Below, piece by piece: positions 1-14,958 of a stretch of 64,000 bases of DNA. How positions within the stretch are numbered: the stretch's first letter is position 1; every line of letters begins with the position of its first letter. The stretch spans positions 15,748,001-15,812,000 of the forward strand of contig OZ059898.1 in the NCBI GenBank assembly GCA_964057225.1, written 5' to 3'. A model generated the notes under the pieces. The model saw only the letters and a program-made list of their open reading frames with translations. It was not told the DNA's origin and did not search any database. A program made the translations under genes and the position numbers. The stretch is from Auanema rhodensis. Lineage: Eukaryota; Animalia; Nematoda.

Positions 1-185
1 TGTTATATTTTCATAGCCATTGTTTTGATTATATCACTCAGTTTGAACTTTAAAAGAACTTCATTTCAGCTTAGTTCTTTCTCTTTTGGCGTTGTGATGG
101 TTGTGCTCGCTTTTTGTTAAAGTTGTTTTTGTGATTGTGGCCAGCCTGTTTGTCTCTGTGATACTTCTCAGTTCCATTATACAGA

Positions 186-3100
186 ATGGACTCGTTATAT
201 TTGAATACTCCTAAACCTTTTACCAAATATCCCACTGGCTATAGGCCAGTAAACTCAAGTTTAGCTGGTGCTCGTCGTTTCGGCAGTGTATCGTCGTTGA
301 GCAATAATTACAATTTTAATGATTGCTCACCAAATCAGCAGCATCATCACTCAACGTCCTATCATCAACAGTATAGTCCCAATAACCCGAATTCTTTTGC
401 GGAAGTGACTTCTCAGAGCAGCAAAAGCTATCGCTATGGTAGTGTTGGACCCTATGGTGAAATGCCTCAGGATAATAGCGCTCTTTCATCTAGAGCTGCT
501 TCGCCACAGAGATACATCTTCCCACAAACACCAAATCTACTCGAAAGCTCAGTAATTCACAGTGAAGTTCCACGAACAATGACAGGTGAAGAATTTCTTG
601 AAAAACTTCGTCGACAAAAAGAAGAAATCGAGCGTACGCTATCCAAGCCTTTGGTCTCCAGTTACATTCAATCACCTCCTCCCTATGGATCCGAAGAGTG
701 TTCCCCTATGATGAAGGCCAACTTTCATGTTCATGATAACATGCCAAATCACGATTCTCGCTTCTACACTAACTCAGCTCCAACACCGTTGTTCAAAACT
801 CGATCAGAATCAGTAATAGATTATGACAGAAAATCTTATCCACATATTTCTCCAATGAATGATCAAAAGATGTGTTCTTCATTTAATGGCCAATTTCATA
901 ATTCTGATCAATTCTCTCCTCCACAACATTTTAATCGTTTGAGTATGCCACCTCCTCCTACTCGTTCGATTGATGATCAAAATCTTCACTGTGAATCTAA
1001 CTGGATGACCCATCCCCCTCCACCTATCAATATGGATCCAAAGCCACATCGGAAGGATTTCAACGGAAACTATGGAGATTCACTTTCATTTAATTTAAAT
1101 GAATCGTTCAAAAATGGACAAACAATTGTTCCTATTAAGCTGGATGATGATAGAATTTTGAAGATTTATGCTCCTCAAATACAACCACAGAATGATGCTG
1201 TTTCTTCTCCTCTAAATATCAAGACTGGTCAACACACACCTGTTTCTAATCCATTGCTTCCGGCATCTGTTCCAAGAGAAGTTAAACCATTTGAGTCAAA
1301 TAGTTATCCTACTTCACCTTACGATTTACGATTTGAACCGTCATCTGATAATGGACCTACATGGAACAGTCCGGTTTCTGCTCCAAATTCTTTTATCCAA
1401 CCTCCACCTCCAAAATACCACCAGCACAACCCTCGGGCAGATTCTACAACCAGCCGATCTATGAGAGTTGGTAGTGTTCAAGATGTTAGCCGAGATAGTT
1501 ATATAGCGAAGGATTATGACAGCAACAATTTCCCAGAAATACCATTAAGTGTGCGGGAAAATAACATACCTGTCGTTTCGCAGCGAACCCGACCTTCACC
1601 ATTTAATTCGCGCCTGGATGAACCTAGCAGAAGAGATTCTTTCTTTGGTCCCGTATCTTCAAAAGTATTTCCAGGTCACAGCCGAATTAACGGCTTCATA
1701 AATGATTCTACACAAGCTTCAGCAGGAACATTCCAACAGGTGGAGCAAACACGAACATCAGCACCCAAGGAGAGATCCTTTGCTATTGTTTCCCGACCAA
1801 GCTCTCCTCCTGTTTCTGTGGAAAGCACAACACGAACGATTCCTAACCATACATTGCGCCAAAGAGATTTTTCCCCTTCCCGAATGAACGAACGACCTTT
1901 TACCTTATCTTCACCGACACAAGAGCCCAGCTCCCCACGATCTATCAGCTTCAGCCCGACGAACTCAATTACAACAAGAAGCTTGGGTTCTCCTATGTCA
2001 TGCTATGATAATGATTCTGAAACAGAACCTCAGCAGAATAAATGGAATTTGCGAAATGATAATGTTTCTCAACATCGCGCAATCCAACCTCTTGCCCAAT
2101 CTACACCACAAGGAATTTTGGTAAAGAATCATGATGGATCTCGCCCACAGAAGAGAGTTGTTTTCCAATGTGATGCAGAAATGATGGATCGCTTGCGTAC
2201 TGAATATGGTAAAGTTTGGAGCTTTCTAACGTAATTTAAGTTGAAACATAGGAATTGCATCTAGCCCAAGCGAAGCTCCTTCTCATGTTCAAGTTTATGA
2301 GGACATAGTCGAATCAGTTCTTGAACCTTTCTATAAGCTTTCCGATGAGATAGGAGGCGATGTTCAAGCTCTCGTAAGCGAATCTGTTTCAAGTTCTTTC
2401 ATATTATGTTTTTTTCAGAAAAACAAGATTGCTTCTACTTTTGACCATTTGAAGAACTTTCTTTGGATTGCCGCTGGAAGAACTGAACCAGCTGACAATG
2501 ATGTTCAAGGTTTAGTTGCTCCAATGGTAAAACTTCTTGGAGAAATCAGTGAATTCAAGGTGTTTATCTTCAATAGTTCTGTTTTACTTTACTCTGCTTT
2601 AGGACTCCAAGAAAGGTAGCGCAGTCTACAATCACTGTTGTGCGGTAGCAGAAGGAATACCCGCTGTTGGATGGGTTTTGATTAAGAAAACTCCCGCTGC
2701 CTACGTTAAAGATATGCTTGAAGCTTCGATGTTCTACGTCAACAAAATCCTCAAAGAATTCAAGGTTATCATATCTCCAGAATCCCGTGTACGCTGTTGT
2801 TTCAGGCCAGTGACCCTAAGCAAGCTGATTGGGCGAAAGCCTGGAAAGAAATTTTGGAATTGATGTGTACCTTTGTCCGTAAAACTCATACAACCGGCCT
2901 TGTATGGAACAGCGCACCTGTAAGTTCTTCGTGTTAAACTTCTAATCTCTTGTCTCAACAGGGAAGCGTTCCACCAAGTGGTTCTGCCGCTCCCGCTAAG
3001 AGTGGTCCACCACCTCCACCTGCAGGAGGACCTCCTCCACCTCCTCCTCCACCACCAACAAGTATGCTCTTCTTGTATAAGCTCTAAATTCTGACTTGGT

Positions 3101-4037
3101 TTCAGATCTGATGGCCGGAATTTCTTCGGGTCCCAGACCAGTCAACGGGAAGGTCGGAAGAAATGCTTTGTTCGCTGAAATTAACAAGGGTGAAAACATT
3201 ACTGCAAACTTGAAGAAGGTTCATGCCGATATGCAAAATCATAAAAATTCTAATACAAATGCTTCGGTGAGTTTAAAGTTCATTCTTTCTAATAGAACTA
3301 TTTATGTAGTCATATGCCTCGGTTAAACATACAGGAGGACTGAACGGGCATGTAGCGTCCAAAGTGTCTGGTTCACGGACACCTAAAATTGAACTTCATG
3401 ATGGCAAGCAATGGAACATTGTAAGTTGTTGAGTAGTTTTGAACGAATCTTATGAGATTTTGTAGGAATATCAAGTGAACAACAGAAATATTGTAATCAA
3501 TATTGATGATAAGAAACAAACTATGTATGTTTTTAAATGCGAAAATTGCGTTATTCAGGTATTTTTTCATAGAAAGTTTCAAAAAATATATTTCTCTTCT
3601 TTAGGTTAAAGGAAAATTGAATTCCATAACTTTGGATGGATGTAAGAAGACTTCAATTGTCTTTGATGCTCTTGTAGCCCAATGTGAAACTATTAACTGT
3701 CAAAGTGTCCAGATTCAGGTTCGAACTCATCGAGGTTTCGCTGAACCTTTTAATCCTTCTGTTTCTAGACTATGGGAGAGATGCCAACTCTTTCAATCCA
3801 GAAAACGGATGGATGCCAAGTGTACTTGAGCGAAGCTTCCCTCGGAGCTGAGATTGTTACTAGTAAATCCAGCGAAATGAACATTCTCATCCCTGGAGCT
3901 GACGGCGAATTCGTAAGCATTGAAAAGCAAAAACGTTGATAAAAATTTGTTTTCAGAATGAATTAGCCGTACCTGAGCAGTTCAAGACGGTTATTGAGCG
4001 GGGAAAACTCGTAACTGTCGCCTCTGACATAATTTAA
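186..4037 (+). CDS. Adenylyl cyclase-associated protein (CAP/Srv2) paralog, copy A, with a ~675-aa Ser/Pro-rich N-terminal extension (~1121 aa if it starts at ATG 186; may have an upstream exon outside the window)
   Basis: Exons joined in frame through GT-AG introns of 41-50 bp: 186-2208, 2252-2373, 2419-2559, 2603-2764, 2806-2919, 2962-3061, 3106-3266, 3310-3420, 3466-3558, 3605-3718, 3769-3912, 3957-4037. The translation shows the CAP helical domain ([32 protein letters not shown]), a polyproline P1 region, WH2 ([19 protein letters not shown]) and the CARP domain ([33 protein letters not shown]). Confidence 0.9.
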
Positions 4038-4258
4038 TTTAAAATTGCAAACCTCGCATGATATTTTCGTTTCTAGCTTTTCGAATTTTGTAAAAATGTC
4101 CTTTTTCGGAATGTTAATGCTCAACAATACGAGTTTTCATCGTTGCAAGCTTTTATTGTGTGAATATATTTATTATTTCACGTGGTTTGAATTTGGATTC
4201 TTGTGTCTTGTCATAATCTCAATTATACTGAAAATATGCAATAATCCTTAATAAATTC
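2315..4258 (+). repeat. Tandem duplication/conversion unit, copy A (pairs with 7617-9562)
   Basis: Aligns to copy B at offset +5302, then +5304. By eye there are ~4 mismatches in 2315-3127 and ~4 in 3394-4258; 3128-3393 is strongly diverged. Confidence 0.95.
4250..4255 (+). terminator. Poly(A) signal of CAP copy A
   Basis: AATAAA ~210 nt after the stop codon; same position in copy B. Confidence 0.65.
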
Positions 4259-6560
4259 ATTAAAATTTATTATCGCCGAATACAATCACGTGTATATTTT
4301 TTAAATTGTGGAAAAAAGTTTTGATTGTATATTTACTACTTCAACAAAACCATTTACTCCTTGAGTCTGTTTGTTTTAAAAGTAATAAAATTTATAAAAT
4401 AACTCTTTCTTTGTTACAATTCATCACTCTTTCAACATTTTTTTCGTAAATCGTGTAACACTAATTATCAAACGTTTAATTTGAGCTCTTCAAAATATTC
4501 ACGTAACGTGAAACAGATTTTATTGCAAATATTGTTGTTGCGAAGAACGGTTGGTTTCTTTTTCACCGAAAATTCCTTGCTTTCCATCGGTATCTGTTGT
4601 GTTTTTCAATTTCTCCGATTCCCCAATAGTTGTATAATTGTAGAACATCTGTAGTTTCTGGTTATTTTATATTGATTACACAAAAATCCAATTTTTACAG
4701 TCTTGTATTAGGCGGAGGTCAAACATTAATTTCAGCGAATGTGTTTTTGAGCTGACCTGCATAAGCTGAGAAAGACAGGTAGAAGATACTAATAACTTTA
4801 TTAACTGCTGTTCATTGTCCTGCATGTGTCATTAGAAACGGGAGAAGAAAGTTTGAACAATGTGTTTGAACATATGGAGAAAAACGTCGAGGTGTTCAAG
4901 TTGAGGACGAAAGACGGCTGTCGATCATTATGCACCGTATCGATCGATGATTTGTCGACCCTCGACCTCCCCCACAGCGCGTCATCTATCTAAGCTCACA
5001 GCTGTCTCTAGAACTATATATCAGTTGCTCATTGATCTTTCTTTTACTTCGACAACATCTGAACAGTTCCCACCCAGCCTCCCCCGTTGTATCAATTTTT
5101 CTTAATACATTGTTAATCCACAGTTTAGTCGCATATAGGTGGCTATTGGAATCAATTGTAGGCAGTGCTTCTCTTTTTTGTTTTTAATTTATTATTTTAT
5201 TTACAAATATTCACTTGTTTTTTTGTCATCTTTTTCAATTATCTTCTTATTTCTATAACAATTATCTTTTTTTCTCGAAATGATCTTAAAATTGAGAATA
5301 GATCATCCCGCATCTATGAACAGACAATATCTACATGTTCACAAAGCGTTTACCTATTATATCATCTATATTGTTCATTTGTCAGTTCAAGTGTTGAATT
5401 CATCTAACGGTTATAACATCAGATTTTCTATTTCATTATTAAAATCAGTTTTCTTTTTAAATTTTTTTCTCAAATCCTGTCCTCTCTGAGTTGTCATAAT
5501 CCTGATTTTAGTGTTATTATCTCGACTTAGTGTATGGTGTTCTTATTGATAAAAGTTAAATCTTGTTGTTTGTCTTCATCATGACAAATGCTTGAGCCAA
5601 AGATTGTGTATATCAAGATACTTAACATCGATCACATGGGCCGACTGATAATTGTCAATTATCATCAACAGAATTTGAAACTGACTTCAATTTGTAAACC
5701 AACCTATTCGCAATACCAATTTCCTTTGAAGATTGATATTAAGGATAATTCCTGCTCAAGTGGAGTGGTATCTCCAATTTCAAGCTTTTCCATAATTTGC
5801 TCTATTGGAGTGCTTGAATGTTTCTTCTGCGACTGCTATTTTCGAACAAACGGTGATAATTTGAACCGTTTGTTAAATATTTGTATTGATGAAAATTTCT
5901 TATACCTGTAACAAAAAGTTTCATTGGCTATTTTTATCAGGTAGAAATCTATATAAGTGTGCCATTAGGAGTACAATCTGCTATCTCTCCATGTTGAGAC
6001 TTTTTTCTCTTCTCTCTTAGTGTTCTGTTACCTATCTCTATCTTTCTGGTTTTTTTAGACATTCATAATGCGCATTCTATGAGTCAACAACCGATCGAGA
6101 GATTTTTCATCGTTTCTTTAGTGTTAATGACGGTTGCATAAATGTTGACTGAGCTTCGCGTTTCTGTTTTTGGTATTGAAGATTATGTTATACTTCTTCA
6201 TATTCGGCTTCTCAGTTTGTTATGTTCTACAAAGCCTACTTTCTCATCACTTATGCTGTAATTGTTGCGTTCAATTACCAGTGAAACCAGACTATGCCCA
6301 CCTTGTAATACATATACGTCTTTCTTTATTCCGAGTAAACCTCTGCATATCCCATGCCTCGTTATGAACTATATACTCTGTTGCAAATATTCTAAATCAC
6401 CTTCAATAATTTCAACTCCAATACGTGCATATGATGATAATATTGTTTATTCGATTCGACATGTGAGTGTTCATGAAAACACCTGAGAAAGCTTCAAATT
6501 AATGTTTCATATCTGGAACGCTTTAGAGCATTTCCTACTTTAATGTCTGAAACCTAATTC

Positions 6561-6566
6561 TTTCAG
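6561..6566 (+). promoter_or_regulatory. Probable trans-splice (outron) acceptor of CAP copy B
   Basis: TTTCAG 12 nt upstream of ATG 6579, with no obvious paired donor. Confidence 0.55.
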
Positions 6567-6578
6567 AACGAGTCAAAT

Positions 6579-9341
6579 ATGGATGATAAGATGGAAAAAC
6601 TTTTACAAAGGCTCGAAATCGCCACCAGCAAGTTAGAAAACTTGACTAGCCAAAAGCCTCCACTTGCTCCCAAGCCAGCAGGTATGGCTGGTGCTGGTTC
6701 TGCCGGTAAGTTTTTCTTTTTCCCCAAACTTTGTCTCCCAAAACAGTATTGCCTGTGTTTTCATTTTGTAATCTTGAATTTTTCTAATGTTTCTTTTAAT
6801 ATATTGATGACGTAAAAGAAACGCATTCCTTTCTCTTGTGAATCATGTCAATTTCGTGTCGACAGTACCAAATCTGTCCTCACTCTTAACATGTCTCTGC
6901 GGAAGCGGATTATTAGTAAAGATCGCCTGCTTACAAGGTTACCAACGTTCCGGTTACCGAGTAAGTTCAATCTTTGTTATTTGGAATTTATTTGTCTGCG
7001 GATTTTGTGGGCAATGATGATTAGTAGTTTTGGTTGGTCGAGGTCCTTTTAATATGGAACTTCGATCTAGTTTCTTGTTTGTTTTTGAACGTTGTTTGGA
7101 ATTAGGCAACATTCACTCATTTTGACCATCTCTTCTAACTCCTCGCTCCGTTTTATACAATGTGTGAGACGATACACGGTGTCTCTCAGCACCTAGAACT
7201 AAGGCGAGTGCCTGAAAAATGTGTCGAACTTATATTTACGTCCTCTGCCACTCTAAATCTTAAAATTAAAAAAATACCAAAGCTAGTTGTTAGGAATTGT
7301 AAGTTATACTCCCTAATTTGAATGTTTGAGAATGTACTCGTATTCTTGAAAGTTTCATTTTTGATTGCTCGACATTAGTAGCGTTTTCCAATATTCTTTC
7401 GAAATATTTATTCTGTTTTTTTAGAAGAAACGGCGATTTCTAGACTTTTCTTTTTCACCTAGATTTAAATTTTCAATAAAATATCCGTTTACCTTTTCAA
7501 ACAAACAAATATGCTAAAATTAGAAAAATTAATTTCAAGCTCAAGTAATTCAGGTGTTGCTGCAAGCTCAGGAGATGCTCCTGCTCATGTTCAAGCTTAT
7601 GAGCAGTCAATGGAGGCAGTTCTTGAACCTTTCTATAAGCTTTCCGATGAGATAGGAGGCGATGTTCAAGCTCTCGTAAGCGAATCTGTTTCAAGTTCTT
7701 TCATATTATGTTTTTTTCAGAAAAACAAAATTGCTTCTACTTTTGACCATTTGAAGAACTTTCTTTGGATTGCCGCTGGAAGAACTGAACCAGCTGACAA
7801 TGATGTTCAAGGTTTAGTTGCTCCAATGGTAAAACTTCTTGGAGAAATCAGTGAATTCAAGGTGTTTATCTTCAATAGTTCTGTTTTACTTTACTCTGCT
7901 TTAGGACTCCAAGAAAGGTAGCGCAGTCTACAATCACTGTTGTGCGGTAGCAGAAGGAATACCCGCTGTTGGATGGGTTTTGATTAAGAAAACTCCCGCT
8001 GCCTACGTTAAAGATATGCTTGAAGCTTCGATGTTCTACGTCAACAAAATCCTCAAAGAATTCAAGGTTATCATATCTCCAGAATCCCGTGTACGCTGTT
8101 GTTTCAGGCCAGTGACCCTAAGCAAGCTGATTGGGCGAAAGCCTGGAAAGAAATTTTGGAATTGATGTGTACCTTTGTCCGTAAAACTCATACAACCGGC
8201 CTTGTATGGAACAGCGCACCTGTAAGTTCTTCGTGTTAAACTTCTAATCTCTTGTCTCAACAGGGAAGCGTTCCACCAAGTGGTTCTGCCGCTCCCGCTA
8301 AGAGTGGCCCACCACCTCCACCTGCAGGAGGACCTCCTCCACCTCCTCCTCCACCACCAACAAGTATGTTCTTCTTGTATAAGCTCTAAATTCTGACTTG
8401 GTTTCAGATCTTATGGCCGGAATTTCTTCCAGTTCGGCCCCTAGTGATGATAAGTCTGGTAGAGATGCTTTGTTCGCTGCAATTAACAAGGGTGAAAACA
8501 TTACTTCGGGTTTGAAGAAAGTAACCGCTGATATGCAGACTCACAAGAATCCAAATCTACGTTCTTCGGTAAAGTTATTAAGTGCCTATTGTTATTAACT
8601 TAGTATTTAGTCTACCGTTTCTGGAGCTATCGGATCTTCTGCCGCGAAGGCTGCCCCCGCTGCTGCTAAGCCTGTCGTTCGGCCACCAAAGATGGAGCTT
8701 CATGATGGCAAGCAATGGAACATTGTAAGTTGTTGAGTAGTTTTGAACGAATCTTATGAGATTTTGTAGGAATATCAAGTGAACAACAGAAATATTGTAA
8801 TCAATATTGATGATAAGAAACAAACTATGTATGTTTTTAAATGCGAAAATTGCGTTATTCAGGTATTTTTTCATAGAAAGTTTCAAAAAATATATTTCTC
8901 TTCTTTAGGTTAAAGGAAAATTGAATTCCATAACTTTGGATGGATGTAAGAAGACTTCAATTGTCTTTGATGCTCTTGTAGCCCAATGTGAAACTATTAA
9001 CTGTCAAAGTGTCCAGATTCAGGTTCGAACTCATCGAGGTTTCGCTGAACCTTTTAATCCGCCTGTTTCTAGACTATGGGAGAGATGCCAACTCTTTCAA
9101 TCCAGAAAACGGATGGATGCCAAGTGTACTTGAGCGAAGCTTCCCTCGGAGCTGAGATTGTTACCAGTAAATCCAGCGAAATGAACATTCTCATCCCTGG
9201 AGCTGACGGCGAATTCGTAAGCATTGAAAAGCAAAAACGTTGATAAAAATTTGTTTTCAGAATGAATTAGCCGTACCTGAGCAGTTCAAGACGGTTATTA
9301 AGCGGGGAAAACTCGTAACTGTCGCCTCTGACATAATTTAA
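6579..9341 (+). CDS. cas-1: Adenylyl cyclase-associated protein (CAP/Srv2), conventional copy B, ~490 aa
   Basis: Exons 6579-6705, 7554-7675, 7721-7861, 7905-8066, 8108-8221, 8264-8363, 8408-8568, 8611-8724, 8770-8862, 8909-9022, 9073-9216, 9261-9341, all in frame. Has the N-terminal RLE oligomerisation motif ([13 protein letters not shown]), helical domain, P1, canonical WH2 ([33 protein letters not shown]) and CARP. The CAP call is firm; cas-1 versus cas-2 is from memory of the N-terminal KPPLAPKP and is less sure. Confidence 0.93.
6891..6960 (+). CDS. Candidate alternative first coding exon of CAP copy B ([23 protein letters not shown])
   Basis: ATG at 6891 and a consensus GTAAGT donor at 6961; phase 1 matches the exon-2 acceptor at 7553. 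Confidence 0.4.
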
Positions 9342-9562
9342 TTTAAAATTGCAAACCTCGCATGATATTTTCGTTTCTAGCTTTTCGAATTTTGTAAAAA
9401 TGTCCTTTTTCGGAATGTTAATGCTCAACAATACGAGTTTTCATCGTTGCAAGCTTTTATTGTGTGAATATATTTATTATTTCACGTGGTTTGAATTTGG
9501 ATTCTTGTGTCTTGTCATAATCTCAATTATACTGAAAATATGCAATAATCCTTAATAAATTC
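7617..9562 (+). repeat. Tandem duplication/conversion unit, copy B
   Basis: Near-identical to 2315-4258 except for 8430-8697. Confidence 0.95.
9554..9559 (+). terminator. Poly(A) signal of CAP copy B
   Basis: AATAAA followed by a T-rich stretch (9577-9603). Confidence 0.65.
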
Positions 9563-9666
9563 GTCCTTACAATATGTTATTTGATTCTAAGTTTTTTCTT
9601 TTTCATATATAGTGAACTCATGGAAGTGAATTCATTGTGCTAGTTTAGTTAGCAATCATCATAGGA

Positions 9667-10991
9667 ATGAAATCTAACGGACAATTACTAGCAGCATCTA
9701 AAATTTCAATTATTCTGAAGGAAATCCTAAACAAAATTTGCTGCTTGAATGATGCTTCTAAACAAAATGGTAATGTGTATATCTGGATACTGAATTTGCG
9801 TTGGTGGTTCAGGATCAACGGAGTTTTATGAATACCTTTCTTCAATGGCTGCTCTGATAGGAGATGAAATTGTTATAAACGGTTTATCAATTGTTGAATC
9901 ATATGGTGTCTCGTTACATTATGATGAAAGTAATCCCGGGATGATGGTTTCTTATATTTGTTTTCAATAGACTCATGTTAATGTTTGTAGAAGAAAGATC
10001 CAAACGAAATTGAAAAAAGCGAAGTTACACATTCCATGGTTTGATTGTTATAACACATTTGTTTCACATTCTTATACTAGGAAGATAATGTTGATCCATT
10101 GGCATTAGATCAATTGCTTCAAGATGATAATGAGGGTATGCTTCAATGTTCTAAATATGTATTCTTCTCTTAAGTTTCATTTGGATAATAGCTCAATTCA
10201 TATGCAACCGCTCATTCGTAATATGCGATTTGAAATAAAAATCGTTTTACAGATTATGCTAATGATGTATTTGAACATTTAACTGAGGATAAACCAAATA
10301 TATCTGTTTTGAATATGGTAAACTCTTAGAGCACTCATATTTAAAATCTGTATTTGGTGTTACTATAGAATAGTTCCCAAATCTCTAATCCTCGAAAAGA
10401 TAGTAATGACAGTACGGATCTATTCTCCGATACTGGTAATCAGGTAGTTACAAATTAGATCTTTGAAGTTTGTTAGATATATTTATAGTCTCTGGAATAT
10501 AAAGATGAAACATCAATCAAATTAGAATCTACTGATGATTTACCAAAAGAAATGTCTGATTATCATTCTGATGCATTAGCATTCTACGAAGTTGATCATA
10601 TGAGAAGAGAAACACAGTATTTTATTTTATTTTTTCAGGTGATTTATAGCCCGTATACACAAAACACATGTTATATTATGCCAGATGTTAACTATTGCTG
10701 CTGTAATCGTTTCCAGGCAAGTCTTAAATGGCACTTCTGATGTTGTCTTTTTATTGTTTTCTTTCATTCTTCACTCTTCTACCTTTCAGATTTTATTTCT
10801 TTTAACTCTTCTCATCTTCTTCTTTTTTTCAGAAAAATGTCGTAGAAGATGAAATTGAATATACTTGTTCTCATATAGTTGCAACATGGCTAGCTAAAGC
10901 TCTGAATAATATACGATACATTCCTGAAAAACCTGAAGCTCTTCATATTATTTCTCGTTCTTTTATTGAAATGGTCAACGAATTCCACTAG
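9667..10991 (+). CDS. sws-1: SWIM zinc-finger protein, SWS1/ZSWIM7-like (Shu complex, homologous recombination), ~272 aa
   Basis: Not in the ORF track as a whole. Exons 9667-9769, 9813-9946, 9991-10038, 10081-10135, 10253-10317, 10369-10443, 10489-10590, 10639-10716, 10833-10991 splice in frame; the last intron is GC-AG. The C-terminus NYCCCNRFQKNVVEDEIEYTCSHIVATWLAKAL fits SWIM CxC-x15-CxH followed by the xxAxxLA helix typical of SWS1/ZSWIM7. The N-terminal EYLSSMAALIGDEIVINGLSIVE resembles the ZSWIM7 N-terminal helices as I recall them. Confidence 0.8.
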
Positions 10992-13900
10992 TCATGATAT
11001 ATCTATCTATATATATATATATATATTAGGATCTTTTCTGCTCCGAGTAGACTTCAATAATCTTCAGTTTCAAGAATAGAATTTTTATTTGTTTTACTTG
11101 TGACGTAAATTCCAATTAAAGTCTTGCGATATTTTTTCTTGAACACGAAATTAACAAAAAATAGCTTAATCAGTAGCTCCCTTCTAAATTTAAATATTGT
11201 TTTGATTTCGAAAATTTTTAGAAATTATGTATTTCGTGTTATCGGTTCTACGCTTTTGATGAAGAAATGCTAAAAAATCTTTTTTTGACAGCCTGTTAAT
11301 AGCATGTCCGCCTACGCACAACGGATCTTTTCATTACAACTAGCAACCGAAAACTTTGGTGTTCTGGATGATAGAAAGTCAAAATGCCTTCTGGATGTCT
11401 GTTCATGTGACTCAAACATCAAAGTGACGTTTACTTTTTGAAAAATTTCATTTTCTTTTCAGGTGTTGAAGTTGATCCCACTTTTCAATATTCTTAAAAA
11501 AAGAAATATAGGGTATAGAGAGTGAACCAGCTATGTATGAACATAGAAATAAATAGAAAATGAATAGAAAAAAACAATAAAAAAGAAAAAACTTGAAGAA
11601 GAAATCAAAAAGGTTATTAAGCTCAAACATAAATTGGTGTTGATGCTAAAATACGGAATTGAACACAGAGAGCTTTTTCTTTTTTTCAGAAAATCATGAG
11701 AATAATGTTTTTTTTCTTCAAGCAATTGAATAACGGAACCAAAATTCTCAAAAAATATAATTTGACATGAGGAACATCTATGTATGATCATCTTGAATCA
11801 GATACTCATTAGTTTCATGAACACGTAAATAAACCTTAGAATGTTCAAACATGAGTTCACTTTGTGTTTCCTCATCATTCTGGAAACTATGTATGAACAC
11901 GAATCAGTGCTTTTATGATGACTATATTAGCTTTCACAGTGAATTCTTGAGCTAAAAAGATCAACTGGTTTTTCATAATTTACCAAAAAAAAGTTAATTT
12001 GTTTCAAAAATTAAAACTAAAATCTGGTATTGCTTGTATGGCCTATGCGAATGTTTCGTTCATTAAAATGGTCTTCAGAAATTTGAACGCTAAGCTTATT
12101 TTATATTTCGAAAACCTGATTTCTGCTCATTAGCTAATCGATGAGACAATTTGAGAAATTAATTTTTTTTGGTTTAATTGGTCAAGTACAATGTGCGGAG
12201 CTAATAGCTTTCTGAAGCTTTTTGGCAAAAATCTTAATTTTGAAAGCATGTGGACAGAGAGCAATTGGCATTAGCTGATAATGCTGATACAAATTTGAAG
12301 CATTGTCGCAGCAAAGTAAGACGATAATCAAGATGCTTGAAGTAAAGCTCATATTCCAATATAAGTTTATACTATTTATGATACGTATTAGTTCGTATGT
12401 TACTTTATGATTCCATGAATTGCCAAGTTCTAGTCATAAAAATGGTCAGTTAGGCGACAATCATAAGTTGGAACAGCCAAAAGAGCAGAGAGCATTTACA
12501 TGACAGGACTGGACGTTTCGTCGAAAGCAAAGACCAGTTTGGACTTTGTAAACATGTAAACAGATTAAAGAACATGGAAAGGATGTTTTGATTCCGAAAT
12601 TGAAACATAAAAGACAACAGCAACAGATGCAGCAAAGCTGTAACATGCAACATGCATGGTATAAGCTAAATGATTACCAGGAAGCTGATGATTAGAAATG
12701 CCTTTTGAACATTTGTCATCAAAAGCTATGAAATCTCACAGACATTTTCAATTAAACCTGAACACAAGCCTTCCACCATTTGTTTCTTTCCATTCCAGCA
12801 CCTACTCTATTCTAATACTAGTGATAAAGAACATTATTTCAAGAATATCAATTAAAATTTAAGTGGCTGGCTGATTGTTGTGTATGTATGTGAGTTTTGA
12901 TGATCAAGAGTTTCCAAATATAATACATCAACTTCACGTTTCAAAAGGGAAAGCCTTGTTCCACTTATATTGTTTCACATACATACATGTACATATGTAT
13001 ATACACATACACATACATGTATGATGAAAAATCTGAGAGAAATGATGAAAAGAGCTGATAGAGAGATGAGGTTACAAAGAGAAATATTTAGTATATCATA
13101 TATACATATATGTATATTAAATATATTTATGCATTATGTTATTTAAATTTAATTTTGTTTTCAAAATTCAAACTCTTTAATTTCAATTTGATATCATTGG
13201 AACAACTTTTATGTATTTTTCGAATATTATTTCAATTTTTCAAATATACGCATATATTACTTTTCTTTTTTCTCTCTTTTTTCATAATAAAAATTAATAA
13301 AAAGAAAAATATGAAAGAAACTATTTTTATTCATATTATTACTACTAAGATTAGAATTCCGTAACCAAATTAACATCAAGTAGCTATCAGAAAACCAAAA
13401 AAAAAATTCGTTTTACAAGCCAATCTTCCACATTTCATAATGAAATAGCAGCCTATTAAAGGGTGATTGTCTAGAATTGATCAAGGAAAATGTGATTTAT
13501 CAAGTCTATGCTTTGATTTGGCTTCTATTTCCTTTTATCATATAAGAGTTTGAGCAACATATAGCATTATATATTTGTTTTTTCAATGTTTTCAGACATC
13601 AATAATAATTTTTTAAAAAAAAAATGTAAATATAAAAATATAATTTCTATAATTTTCTTTTTTCATAATTCAATAATTATTATAAATATTAATATTTGTA
13701 GAATTATTAGACATATACATGCATATACATGTATGCTAAGAAGCAGCAATTTATGCTTCTTTTTGAAATAATTAAATAGATTGAATATTTCATGAAATCT
13801 TAAAGTCATTCATCAAACTTTATATCTTTTGATACATAATAATTGAAAATAATACTTTTTCTTTGGATTATAAAAGAGTAAAAACGAATTAAACTCTGAT

Positions 13901-14909
13901 GTTTTACTACTATTAGAATATGTGTTTCTTTATGTTTTGTAATATTTAATTTTAAAAAATAATTAAGAAATATGATCAACCGTTTAACTGATCCATTCAA
14001 AATTAAATAATCAAACCCACGTTTCACGTAACTCTCTCCCTCTTTCTCTCTCTCTCTCTATCTCTCTCTCTCTCTACGTTCATTTATCTCAATATCACGT
14101 ATAGTTCTTCATTAGAGTATTGAAATATGTACTACATATAATCAAGTTTTTAATAATTTTATTTTTTACTTTTTAAACATTTGAGCTTTTAGTTTTATCC
14201 GTTTTTTTCTGATAACTCTCAATACTTTTTTTGAATCTCTTTACTTGAATCTAGACATTTCTAGTGGAAAATAACTAAATTAATTTCTTTTCTTCAATAT
14301 TTCTCTGGCCAATGAATGTTTCAAATTAAAATTTTGTTCTTCAACAGAGGAAAAAAAACTTTTTTTCAGGAAATTTCTAATTGAATTTGTTTTATTATTT
14401 ATTAATATATAATATATGTATGATAGTTAACTGCATATACATAGTATATATCATTCACGTCATTTGCAAATTCATAATTCTTCGTGACACCTACTTCCAT
14501 CTAAAAACCAAAACAAAATTTAGATCGAATGAATTCATTAACTATACCTTCTTCAATGTTTCATAATAATTGCATATTTATCATCTGAGAAACTTGAGCT
14601 TTTTTTTGTGTCTCACCTTCAACTTAACCAGCATTAGCTATTCATCTGAGCAACTTAGCTGCACTCAAATCAACGATATGAATAGATTTCCTGTTTTCTT
14701 CTAATATGAGATATTCAATATCGATAATAGTTTAACTTCGATAATAGTTTTTCCATGTACTACAAGTTCAGTGATAGTCGAAAGAGTGATAGAGTTTGGG
14801 TCAACAAGTATGACTGTATGTAACATCAAAACTTGATGTTTCCCTCATTTAGAATAAGCGTTATGTAAATTCTGCAAATGTTTCGTCTACTCTCAAAAGG
14901 GCTAAACGA

Positions 14910-14913
<4 letters not shown>

Positions 14914-14958
<45 letters not shown>

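What the first reader, a model, noticed from the sequence alone, without database searches (positions are those of the whole stretch)
2252..9562. Tandem CAP paralogs are a gene-conversion mosaic with sharply bounded divergent islands
Seen: across ~1.68 kb I count only ~8 mismatches by eye (A 2315-3127 vs B 7617-8429; A 3394-4258 vs B 8698-9562), and these blocks include nine introns and the 3'UTR. In contrast A 3128-3393 vs B 8430-8697 (WH2 exon, intron 7, P2 linker) and the first ~63 nt of exon 2 are old-divergent, and intron 7 cannot be aligned. A recent duplication alone cannot give identical introns flanking a saturated one. Inference: an old duplication is repeatedly homogenised by conversion, while selection keeps the actin-binding WH2/linker and the N-termini different. 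This would be concerted evolution with protected specificity modules.
Basis: partly seen in the sequence, partly recalled or inferred. Interest (0 to 1): 0.78.

Follow-up and report, generated by a model that had tools for sequence, protein, structure and literature searches.

The report
Gene-conversion mosaic between tandem CAP genes
Two neighbouring copies of a worm actin-regulator gene (CAP) are letter-identical over most of their length, because one copy was copied onto the other, but keep an old, very different 266-letter stretch encoding one actin-binding motif; this is a clean example of a well-known process, not a new one.

Summary
Block A 2315-3127 / B 7617-8429 has 4 mismatches in 813 bp. 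Block A 3394-4258 / B 8698-9562 has 4 in 865 bp. Together they span nine introns (3 differences in 400 nt) and the 3'UTR (0 in 221). Between them lies a 266/268-bp island (55% identity; intron 7 37%; synonymous divergence about 1 or saturated, against 0.01-0.03 in the blocks). The first 63 nt of exon 2 are 70% identical.

Both copies are intact cyclase-associated protein genes and the only CAP loci in the 181-Mb assembly, so no third donor exists.

New context:
- Copy A is the "long" CAP, with a 674-codon first exon spliced in frame to exon 2. Copy B is the canonical short CAP.
- The nearest available relative, Auanema sp. JU1783, has both first exons on one body.
- In the island, copy A is the derived one (24 unique residues against 3) and changes WH2 positions invariant in 160 animal CAPs.

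Selection protecting the island is plausible but unproven. The different N-termini need no selection, and "repeated" homogenisation is not shown. Earlier notes of this scan report similar mosaics at other loci of this genome.

The parts
186..2208 (+). Copy A first coding exon: a 674-codon low-complexity 'giant' exon with its own ATG and a phase-1 donor (G|GTAAAG)
   Evidence: Open frame 186-2234. It is 48% identical to Auanema sp. JU1783 P0001. Its N-terminal 33 residues are conserved with Caenorhabditis long CAPs. The start context is conserved with JU1783, with in-frame stops upstream. Splicing 2208 to 2252 keeps the frame and gives an intact 1,121-aa model.
2252..2314 (+). Copy A, first 63 nt of exon 2: old-divergent 5' margin (partner B 7554-7616)
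   Evidence: 69.8% identity; dS 0.46 and dN 0.33 over 21 codons; symmetric change against the outgroup, 3 against 3.
2315..3127 (+). Converted block 1 in copy A: rest of exon 2, exons 3-6, start of exon 7, introns 2-6 (HFD domain and P1 polyproline)
   Evidence: 809/813 identical to B 7617-8429. Exon-wise Pfam CAP_N PF21938 hits are contiguous across exons.
3128..3393 (+). Divergent island in copy A: WH2 motif (exon 7), intron 7 (3267-3309), P2 linker (exon 8 start)
   Evidence: 55.5% identical to B 8430-8697. dS is 1.07 in exon 7 and saturated in exon 8; WH2 core dN/dS is 0.12. A end branch 2.15 against B 0.10. KVT>KVH and THKNP>NHKNS. WH2 Pfam 19.0 bits.
3394..4258 (+). Converted block 2 in copy A: end of exon 8, exons 9-12 (CARP domain), introns 8-11, stop at 4035-4037, 3'UTR with AATAAA at 4250-4255
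   Evidence: 861/865 identical to B 8698-9562. CAP_C PF08603 hits per exon.
6579..6705 (+). Copy B exon 1: canonical CAP N-terminal oligomerisation motif, phase-1 donor
   Evidence: PF01213 CAP_N-CM, 27.8 bits. 68% identical to JU1783 exon 1. No counterpart within 6 kb upstream of copy A.
7554..7616 (+). Copy B, first 63 nt of exon 2 (partner of A 2252-2314)
7617..8429 (+). Converted block 1 in copy B
8430..8697 (+). Island in copy B: canonical WH2, intron 7 (8569-8610), P2 linker
   Evidence: B keeps the nematode consensus ([23 protein letters not shown]; AKPVVRPPK) and is 73% identical to JU1783 here. WH2 Pfam 20.8 bits.
8698..9562 (+). Converted block 2 in copy B: CARP exons, stop 9339-9341, 3'UTR

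Best explanation
Shown: two intact, same-strand CAP (cyclase-associated protein) genes lie 5.3 kb apart and are the only CAP loci in the assembly. Copy A encodes a long form: a 674-codon disordered first exon plus exons 2-12, without the oligomerisation exon. Copy B encodes the canonical 490-aa form. Exons 2-12 and their introns are a mosaic. Two tracts of 813 and 865 bp are 99.5% identical through introns, synonymous sites and the 3'UTR. They flank a 266-bp island (WH2 motif, intron 7, P2 linker) whose synonymous sites are at or near saturation.

Inferred, with good support: the duplication is old (island dS about 1 or more). The ancestral gene carried both first exons on one body, as Auanema sp. 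JU1783 still does, and each copy then lost one first exon. Much later, non-allelic (interlocus) gene conversion copied one body onto the other in at least two tracts that stop at the island.

Inferred, weaker: the island survives because copy A's WH2/P2 module has acquired a different function. It has replacements at positions invariant in other animal CAPs, including the THKN cluster that tunes ATP-G-actin binding in mouse CAP1. On this view, convertants that overwrite it are removed by selection.
For: Mosaic and its statistics. Exon models, intact frames and canonical splice sites in both copies. CAP domains found exon by exon, with contiguous profile coordinates. Only two CAP loci in the 181-Mb genome and no other match to the island. 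dS is 0.01-0.03 in the blocks, 0.46 in the 5' margin and at least 1.07 in the island; WH2 core dN/dS is 0.12. The JU1783 locus is syntenic (PARP2 upstream) and holds short exon 1, the giant exon and one body with the same intron positions. Long CAPs are found across Nematoda. Copy A is the derived copy: Tajima counts of 24 against 3 (chi2 16.3) and an end branch of 2.15 against 0.10. In 160 animal CAPs the T of THKN is 160/160, T/S after LKKV is 160/160 and P is 156/160, and copy A differs at all three. THKN>AAAA lowers ATP-G-actin binding only (Kotila et al. 2018, PMC5951797).
Against: No reads, population data or RNA data could be examined, so the exact identity level of the blocks and the expression of the fused copy A model are unverified. 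The island tree cannot place the duplication relative to the JU1783 split: (A,B) has support 22/49, and (B,JU1783) is not rejected (p-AU 0.3). Both blocks have the same divergence, so only one or two events are needed, and this weakens any argument for selection from 'persistence'. Block 2 runs identical to the last homologous base (4258), which is unusual for ordinary conversion. Copy A's fast island could reflect relaxed constraint rather than a new function.
Confidence: 0.8

Rival explanations
1. The mosaic is real and made by conversion, but the island persists passively. Few conversion events have occurred. A stretch only 55% identical cannot initiate or anchor a tract. Copy A's island is simply under relaxed constraint, while the rest of copy A is kept looking healthy by copying from B.
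For: Equal divergence of the two blocks (4/813 and 4/865) fits one or two events. Copy A's linker has dN 0.5 and has lost the prolines of P2. The change is asymmetric, 24 against 3. Three of the four block-1 mismatches lie within 122 bp of the island edge, as an edge effect would predict.
Against: The WH2 core of copy A is still constrained (dN/dS 0.12 at dS about 1). It keeps an open frame, working splice sites and the LKKV and RxALF..IN.GE.IT clusters, and it still scores as WH2 (19.0 against 20.8 bits). Identical flanks of more than 800 bp on both sides would allow gap repair straight across the island.
Confidence: 0.4
2. Assembly or polishing artefact: reads from one copy were used to correct the other, creating false identity.
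For: No reads could be checked. Other notes of this scan report many letter-identical tracts between paralogs in this genome, which could in principle have a technical cause.
Against: Cross-mapping needs copies that are already very similar. It cannot turn introns diverged like intron 7 (37% identity) into 99% identical ones. Eight mismatches remain, so the copies were resolved. The copies have different first exons and flanks, there are no N, the contig is 21.6 Mb long, and there is no haplotig copy elsewhere. At most, the degree of identity is inflated.
Confidence: 0.05
3. A recent duplication of exons 2-12, after which the island and the 5' 63 nt of one copy were replaced from a third, diverged CAP sequence or changed by local hypermutation.
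For: The blocks alone look like a young duplicate. Homology ends abruptly at both ends.
Against: The genome holds no third CAP locus or island-like sequence. The island is homologous, with saturated synonymous sites and an unalignable intron, which point mutation cannot produce in the time that left 0.5% in the flanks. Two separate replacements would be needed.
Confidence: 0.03
4. Homogenisation came from unequal crossing-over cycles or replication template switching rather than classical conversion.
For: Block 2 is identical right up to the last homologous base, with no unconverted margin. Tandem orientation permits unequal exchange.
Against: Unequal crossover changes copy number and would give hybrid genes, not two internal tracts around a retained island with both gene-specific first exons kept. 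Two template switches with precise in-register junctions would be needed.
Confidence: 0.1

Closest known systems
Interlocus (non-allelic) gene conversion between tandem paralogs with unconverted, functionally diverged segments. From my own knowledge, not checked here: primate red/green opsins, RHD/RHCE, gamma-globins; genome surveys in C. elegans (Semple & Wolfe 1999) and Drosophila; theory by Teshima & Innan 2004.
   Same: Old duplicates. Tracts of near-identity run through introns and synonymous sites. The borders are sharp. A retained divergent segment covers a functional module.
   Different: Here the two genes also carry non-homologous first exons, descended from alternative first exons of one ancestral gene. 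No population or multi-species data yet show recurrent conversion or selection.
Nematode CAP genes: C. elegans CAS-1/CAS-2 (review PMC7543520) and the long CAP forms of 1000-1260 aa annotated across Nematoda
   Same: Same domain order: OD, HFD, P1, WH2, P2, CARP. The giant N-terminal exon and its conserved first 33 residues are shared with Caenorhabditis, strongylid, ascarid and filarial long forms.
   Different: In JU1783 the long and short first exons share one body. Here each has its own body in tandem, and the long-form gene has a WH2 with replacements not seen in 160 other CAPs. Whether CAS-1/CAS-2 correspond to this pair was not tested.
Other conversion mosaics noted by this scan in the same genome (vms-1, pha-4, BarH, smc-3, FAS pairs)
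   Same: Tandem old paralogs with letter-identical tracts and old islands.
   Different: They are different loci. Those notes are unchecked here.

Membership tests
CAP/Srv2 (cyclase-associated protein) | N-terminal oligomerisation motif (Pfam CAP_N-CM, PF01213) | tested here: met
   Copy B exon 1 scores 27.8 bits against a cut-off of 19. Copy A lacks it: no counterpart in the giant exon or within 6 kb upstream, as expected for the nematode long form.
CAP/Srv2 (cyclase-associated protein) | Helical folded domain (PF21938) | tested here: met
   Exons 3-5 hit profile positions 29-73, 74-127 and 129-159; exon 4 scores 68.3 bits. Both loci were found genome-wide.
CAP/Srv2 (cyclase-associated protein) | WH2 motif between two proline-rich stretches | tested here: inconclusive
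   Pfam WH2 gives 20.8 bits for B and 19.0 bits for A, both under the 23.1 cut-off. By alignment, B matches the nematode CAP WH2 consensus. A keeps RxALF, IN.GE.IT and LKKV but changes T>H, T>N and P>S. P1 polyproline is present in both; P2 prolines are lost in A.
CAP/Srv2 (cyclase-associated protein) | C-terminal CARP beta-helix domain (PF08603) | tested here: met
   Exons 9-11 hit profile positions 15-45, 46-83 and 85-131, with 49.9 and 59.7 bits. Both loci hit.
Interlocus gene conversion / concerted evolution | Tracts far more similar than adjacent homologous sequence, beyond chance | tested here: met
   99.5% against 55-70% identity. Longest identical run 578, against at most 185 in 20,000 shuffles.
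Interlocus gene conversion / concerted evolution | Identity extends through neutral sites, so constraint cannot explain it | tested here: met
   Nine introns differ at 3/400, the 3'UTR at 0/221, and intron 7 at 27/43. dS is 0.01-0.03 against at least 1.07.
Interlocus gene conversion / concerted evolution | Tree conflict: converted blocks group by species, unconverted block by paralog | tested here: inconclusive
   The only near relative in the databases (JU1783, 70.6% aa) has one body. The island tree gives (A,B) support 22/49, and (B,JU1783) is not rejected, p-AU 0.3.
Interlocus gene conversion / concerted evolution | Not an assembly artefact (reads span both copies) | not testable with these tools
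   No reads were available. Indirect arguments only.
Subfunctionalisation by partition of alternative first exons | Ancestral single gene carrying both first exons | tested here: met
   JU1783 locus L016 has exon 1 at 10001-10112, the giant exon at 11174-13154 and one body at 13225-14950, with PARP2 upstream as here. Long forms are found across Nematoda.
Subfunctionalisation by partition of alternative first exons | Reciprocal loss in the two copies, and separate expression | tested here: inconclusive
   Reciprocal absence is shown: there is no OD exon upstream of A and no trace of the giant exon in B intron 1. Expression could not be tested.

The most novel reading that the evidence does not exclude
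After a two-promoter CAP gene split into a long-form gene and a short-form gene, the long-form copy evolved its own WH2-P2 actin-monomer module, changing residues otherwise invariant in animal CAPs. Selection now shields exactly that module from ongoing conversion, which keeps every other exon and intron identical. This would be escape from adaptive conflict between isoforms, visible at nucleotide resolution. It would also be a natural domain-swap pair for asking what the unstudied long CAP isoform of nematodes does.
Probability: 0.3. Interest if true: 0.6.

Novelty: new member of a known kind. Interest (0 to 1): 0.4.

Why it matters
The process itself, conversion between tandem duplicates that leaves diverged islands, is textbook. 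The scan's own notes suggest it is common in this genome.

The local value is twofold. First, it gives a very clean, statistically unambiguous example, with borders resolved to a few bases. Second, it yields two natural CAP proteins that are identical except for the N-terminal exon and the WH2-P2 module. The WH2 changes include the THKN cluster, which is known from mouse CAP1 mutagenesis to affect ATP-G-actin binding only. That makes a specific biochemical comparison possible. It also draws attention to the conserved but apparently unstudied long CAP isoform of nematodes.

Tried and rejected
- Third-donor idea. Whole-genome searches with the body DNA, the island DNA, the copy A WH2 exon, PF08603 and PF21938 found only the two loci. 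Rejected.
- Remnants of reciprocal loss. No trace of the OD exon was found within 6 kb upstream of copy A, and no trace of the giant exon in B intron 1 or the A-B spacer. The flanks share no DNA similarity.
- Closer relatives. The giant-exon word search found only JU1783. Two further word searches, using P0001 residues 640-1081 and P0021 residues 347-801, found nothing closer than 70.6% to copy B and no second Auanema CAP. This used all three word searches.
- Dating the duplication against the JU1783 split with an island tree and AU tests: unresolved. Synonymous distances to JU1783 are saturated.
- Mesorhabditis spiculigera as a parallel tandem case. Its P0021 locus has no second CAP within 10 kb, and P0121 is a near-identical model. 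This was not pursued.
- An Rfam scan of window 1-12000 found nothing.
- Literature search for CAP gene conversion in nematodes found no specific report.

Not run:
- The large representative-protein search, which the operators flagged as costly. It would not add close relatives, because it holds 50% cluster representatives.
- Structure prediction.

The joined (spliced) protein models of A and B were never handed to a database tool. Those searches were done exon by exon, by reference. Joined models were used only inside local scripts, for translation, dN/dS and comparison with proteins already fetched.
Full report
**What is there**

A seed search and a BLAST comparison found one collinear match between window 2263-4258 and 7565-9562, at 94% identity overall. 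A global alignment resolves this match into a mosaic:

| Segment | A coordinates | B coordinates | Identity |
|---|---|---|---|
| Upstream | before 2245 | | about 36% (unrelated level) |
| 5' margin (start of exon 2) | 2252-2314 | 7554-7616 | 69.8% |
| Block 1 | 2315-3127 | 7617-8429 | 809/813 |
| Central island | 3128-3393 | 8430-8697 | 55.5% |
| Block 2 | 3394-4258 | 8698-9562 | 861/865 |
| Downstream | after 4258 | | about 36% (unrelated level) |

The eight mismatches lie at A 2427, 3006, 3067, 3110, 3757, 3758, 3861 and 3996.

**Gene models**

The small introns (41-50 nt) with GT...AG ends fit a rhabditid nematode. Earlier notes of this scan call the genome Auanema-like, and my closest protein match agrees.

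- Copy B has 12 exons: 6579-6705, 7554-7675, 7721-7861, 7905-8066, 8108-8221, 8264-8363, 8408-8568, 8611-8724, 8770-8862, 8909-9022, 9073-9216 and 9261-9341. They encode 490 aa.
- Copy A has exons 2-12 at the matching places: 2252-2373, 2419-2559, 2603-2764, 2806-2919, 2962-3061, 3106-3266, 3310-3420, 3466-3558, 3605-3718, 3769-3912 and 3957-4037.
- Copy A has no counterpart of exon 1. Instead, the 2,023-nt open exon 186-2208 ends in a phase-1 donor (G|GTAAAG), 43 nt before exon 2. This is the same phase as B exon 1.
- The joined copy A frame is intact and encodes 1,121 aa.

Searched exon by exon, by reference, copy B gives CAP_N-CM (exon 1), CAP_N/HFD (exons 3-5, with contiguous profile coordinates), WH2 (exon 7) and CAP_C/CARP (exons 9-11). 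Copy A's exon 7 still scores as WH2, at 19.0 bits against 20.8 for B. The joined models were not given to any database tool. They were used only in local scripts.

**More than chance, and not constraint**

- The longest identical run is 578 columns. In 20,000 column shuffles the maximum was 185.
- The nine introns inside the blocks differ at 3 of 400 positions, and the 3'UTR at 0 of 221.
- Intron 7 differs at 27 of 43 columns (Fisher p = 8e-29).
- Nei-Gojobori synonymous divergence is 0.03 in block 1 and 0.01 in block 2. It is 0.46 in the 63-nt 5' margin (21 codons), 1.07 in the exon 7 part of the island, and saturated in the exon 8 part.

The blocks are thus roughly two orders of magnitude younger than the island at neutral sites.

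**No third donor**

The assembly has 181 Mb in 112 contigs, and the window lies on a 21.6-Mb contig. It holds only these two matches to the body DNA, to PF08603, to PF21938, to the island DNA and to copy A's WH2 exon. A young duplication whose island was imported from elsewhere is therefore not supported. The remaining reading is an old duplication followed by interlocus recombination.

**Context from relatives**

The giant exon has a single database relative, a 1,081-aa protein of Auanema sp. JU1783 (48% identical). Its locus is syntenic, with PARP2 upstream in both species. It contains, in order:

- a short OD exon 1 (L016 10001-10112);
- the giant exon (11174-13154, with its own ATG);
- one CAP body (13225-14950), with the same intron positions as here except that intron 10 is absent.

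The giant exon's start codon, its first 30 residues and the sequence just upstream are conserved. In-frame stops lie upstream in both species, so it is an alternative first exon, not an internal one.

The two-first-exon gene is therefore ancestral.

In the window the order is giant exon, body A, exon 1, body B. Neither copy retains a trace of the other's first exon. The simplest history is a tandem duplication of the whole gene with reciprocal loss of one first exon in each copy. This agrees with the separate note s1-429915 on this window.

No relative closer than JU1783 (70.6% aa to copy B) is in the searchable collections, and only one Auanema CAP was listed.

**Which copy changed**

In the island, copy B is canonical. 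It reads [35 protein letters not shown], then AKPVVRPPK, nearly as in JU1783. Copy A reads [35 protein letters not shown] and has lost the prolines of P2.

- With JU1783 as outgroup, A has 24 unique residues against 3 for B (chi2 16.3). Distant outgroups give the same direction.
- In a maximum-likelihood tree of the island, A's end branch is 2.15 against 0.10 for B.
The residue after LKKV is T or S in all of them, and the P is present in 156. Copy A differs at all three positions.
- In mouse CAP1, THKN>AAAA lowers ATP-G-actin binding but leaves ADP-actin binding and nucleotide exchange intact (Kotila et al. 2018, PMC5951797).
- The WH2 core is still constrained (dN/dS 0.12 at dS about 1).

Copy A's island therefore looks like a constrained but shifted module rather than decay. 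Relaxed constraint in the linker cannot be excluded.

**Age of the duplication**

The island tree puts A and B together inside an A+B+JU1783 group, but with weak support (22/49). The alternative (B,JU1783) is not rejected (p-AU 0.3). Synonymous distances to JU1783 are saturated. The duplication may post-date the split from JU1783, which has one body. Loss of a copy in JU1783 is not excluded.

- The conversion mosaic on an old duplicate is supported.
- "Repeatedly homogenised" is not shown. The two blocks have the same divergence (0.49% and 0.46%), so one or two events suffice.
- "Selection keeps the N-termini different" is not needed. The N-termini are non-homologous exons. The 63-nt margin lies at the edge of homology, where conversion is mechanically disfavoured. 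It evolves symmetrically and is poorly conserved in all nematodes.
- Selection protecting WH2/P2 is plausible, for two reasons. Copy A carries derived changes at invariant positions but stays constrained. Identical flanks of more than 800 bp on each side would allow repair straight across the island. It remains an inference.

**Artefact check**

Reads could not be examined. Mis-polishing needs copies that are already very similar, and it cannot create 99% identical introns from sequence diverged like intron 7. Eight mismatches remain. The copies have different first exons and flanks. There are no N and no haplotig copy. At most, the level of identity is inflated.

Earlier notes report similar mosaics at several other loci of this genome. 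I did not check them. They suggest either frequent conversion in this species or a shared technical cause, which makes read-level validation the first thing to do.

**Unexplained**

Block 2 is identical for its last 262 bp, right up to the end of all homology, 3 nt after the AATAAA signal. The 5' edge, in contrast, keeps a divergent margin.

**Verdict**

This is a real, clean and ordinary-in-kind gene-conversion mosaic. It has an interesting local twist: two CAP genes descended from alternative isoforms, identical except for the first exon and a derived WH2-P2 module.

Noticed in passing
window 4896-5067 and 6891-7273: Two non-coding elements are conserved with Auanema sp. JU1783 despite saturated synonymous distance. 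The first is 77% identical over 173 bp and lies upstream of the short CAP exon 1. The second is 68% identical over 391 bp and lies inside intron 1 just after exon 1. Both keep the same relative position in the two species, and neither has an Rfam match. They are probably regulatory elements of the short isoform.
   Followed up: partly
L016 10001-13154 (Auanema sp. JU1783): The public gene model P0001 joins the short exon 1 to the giant exon through an internal 'intron' (11276-11427). However, the giant ORF is continuous from its own conserved ATG at 11174. The model probably merges two alternative first exons.
   Followed up: partly
window 3719-3768 and 9023-9072; L016 14567-14824: Intron 10 is present in both window copies but absent in JU1783, where exons 10 and 11 are fused. 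This is an intron gain or loss between the species.
   Followed up: no
P0021/P0121 (L018) and P0034, Mesorhabditis spiculigera: Mesorhabditis spiculigera carries a long-form CAP gene, and a CAP with the OD exon on a different contig. Their bodies are clearly diverged and both have canonical WH2 motifs. The split of long and short CAP forms into two genes may have happened more than once in nematodes.
   Followed up: partly
window 186-290: The first 33 residues of the giant exon ([25 protein letters not shown]...) are about 60% identical to the N-termini of Caenorhabditis remanei and C. brenneri long CAPs. Its last residues (KRVVFQCD...RLR.EYG) are conserved across nematode long forms. These are short conserved motifs in an otherwise fast-evolving disordered region.
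   Followed up: partly
window 3006-3127: Three of the four block-1 mismatches (3006, 3067, 3110) cluster within 122 bp of the island's left border. The 363 bp to the right of the island are perfect. This may be an edge gradient of conversion frequency.
   Followed up: no
window 4250-4262 / 9554-9569: Identity ends 3 nt after the AATAAA polyadenylation signal, with no divergent margin. The end of the converted tract coincides with the end of detectable homology and nearly with the end of the transcript.
   Followed up: no
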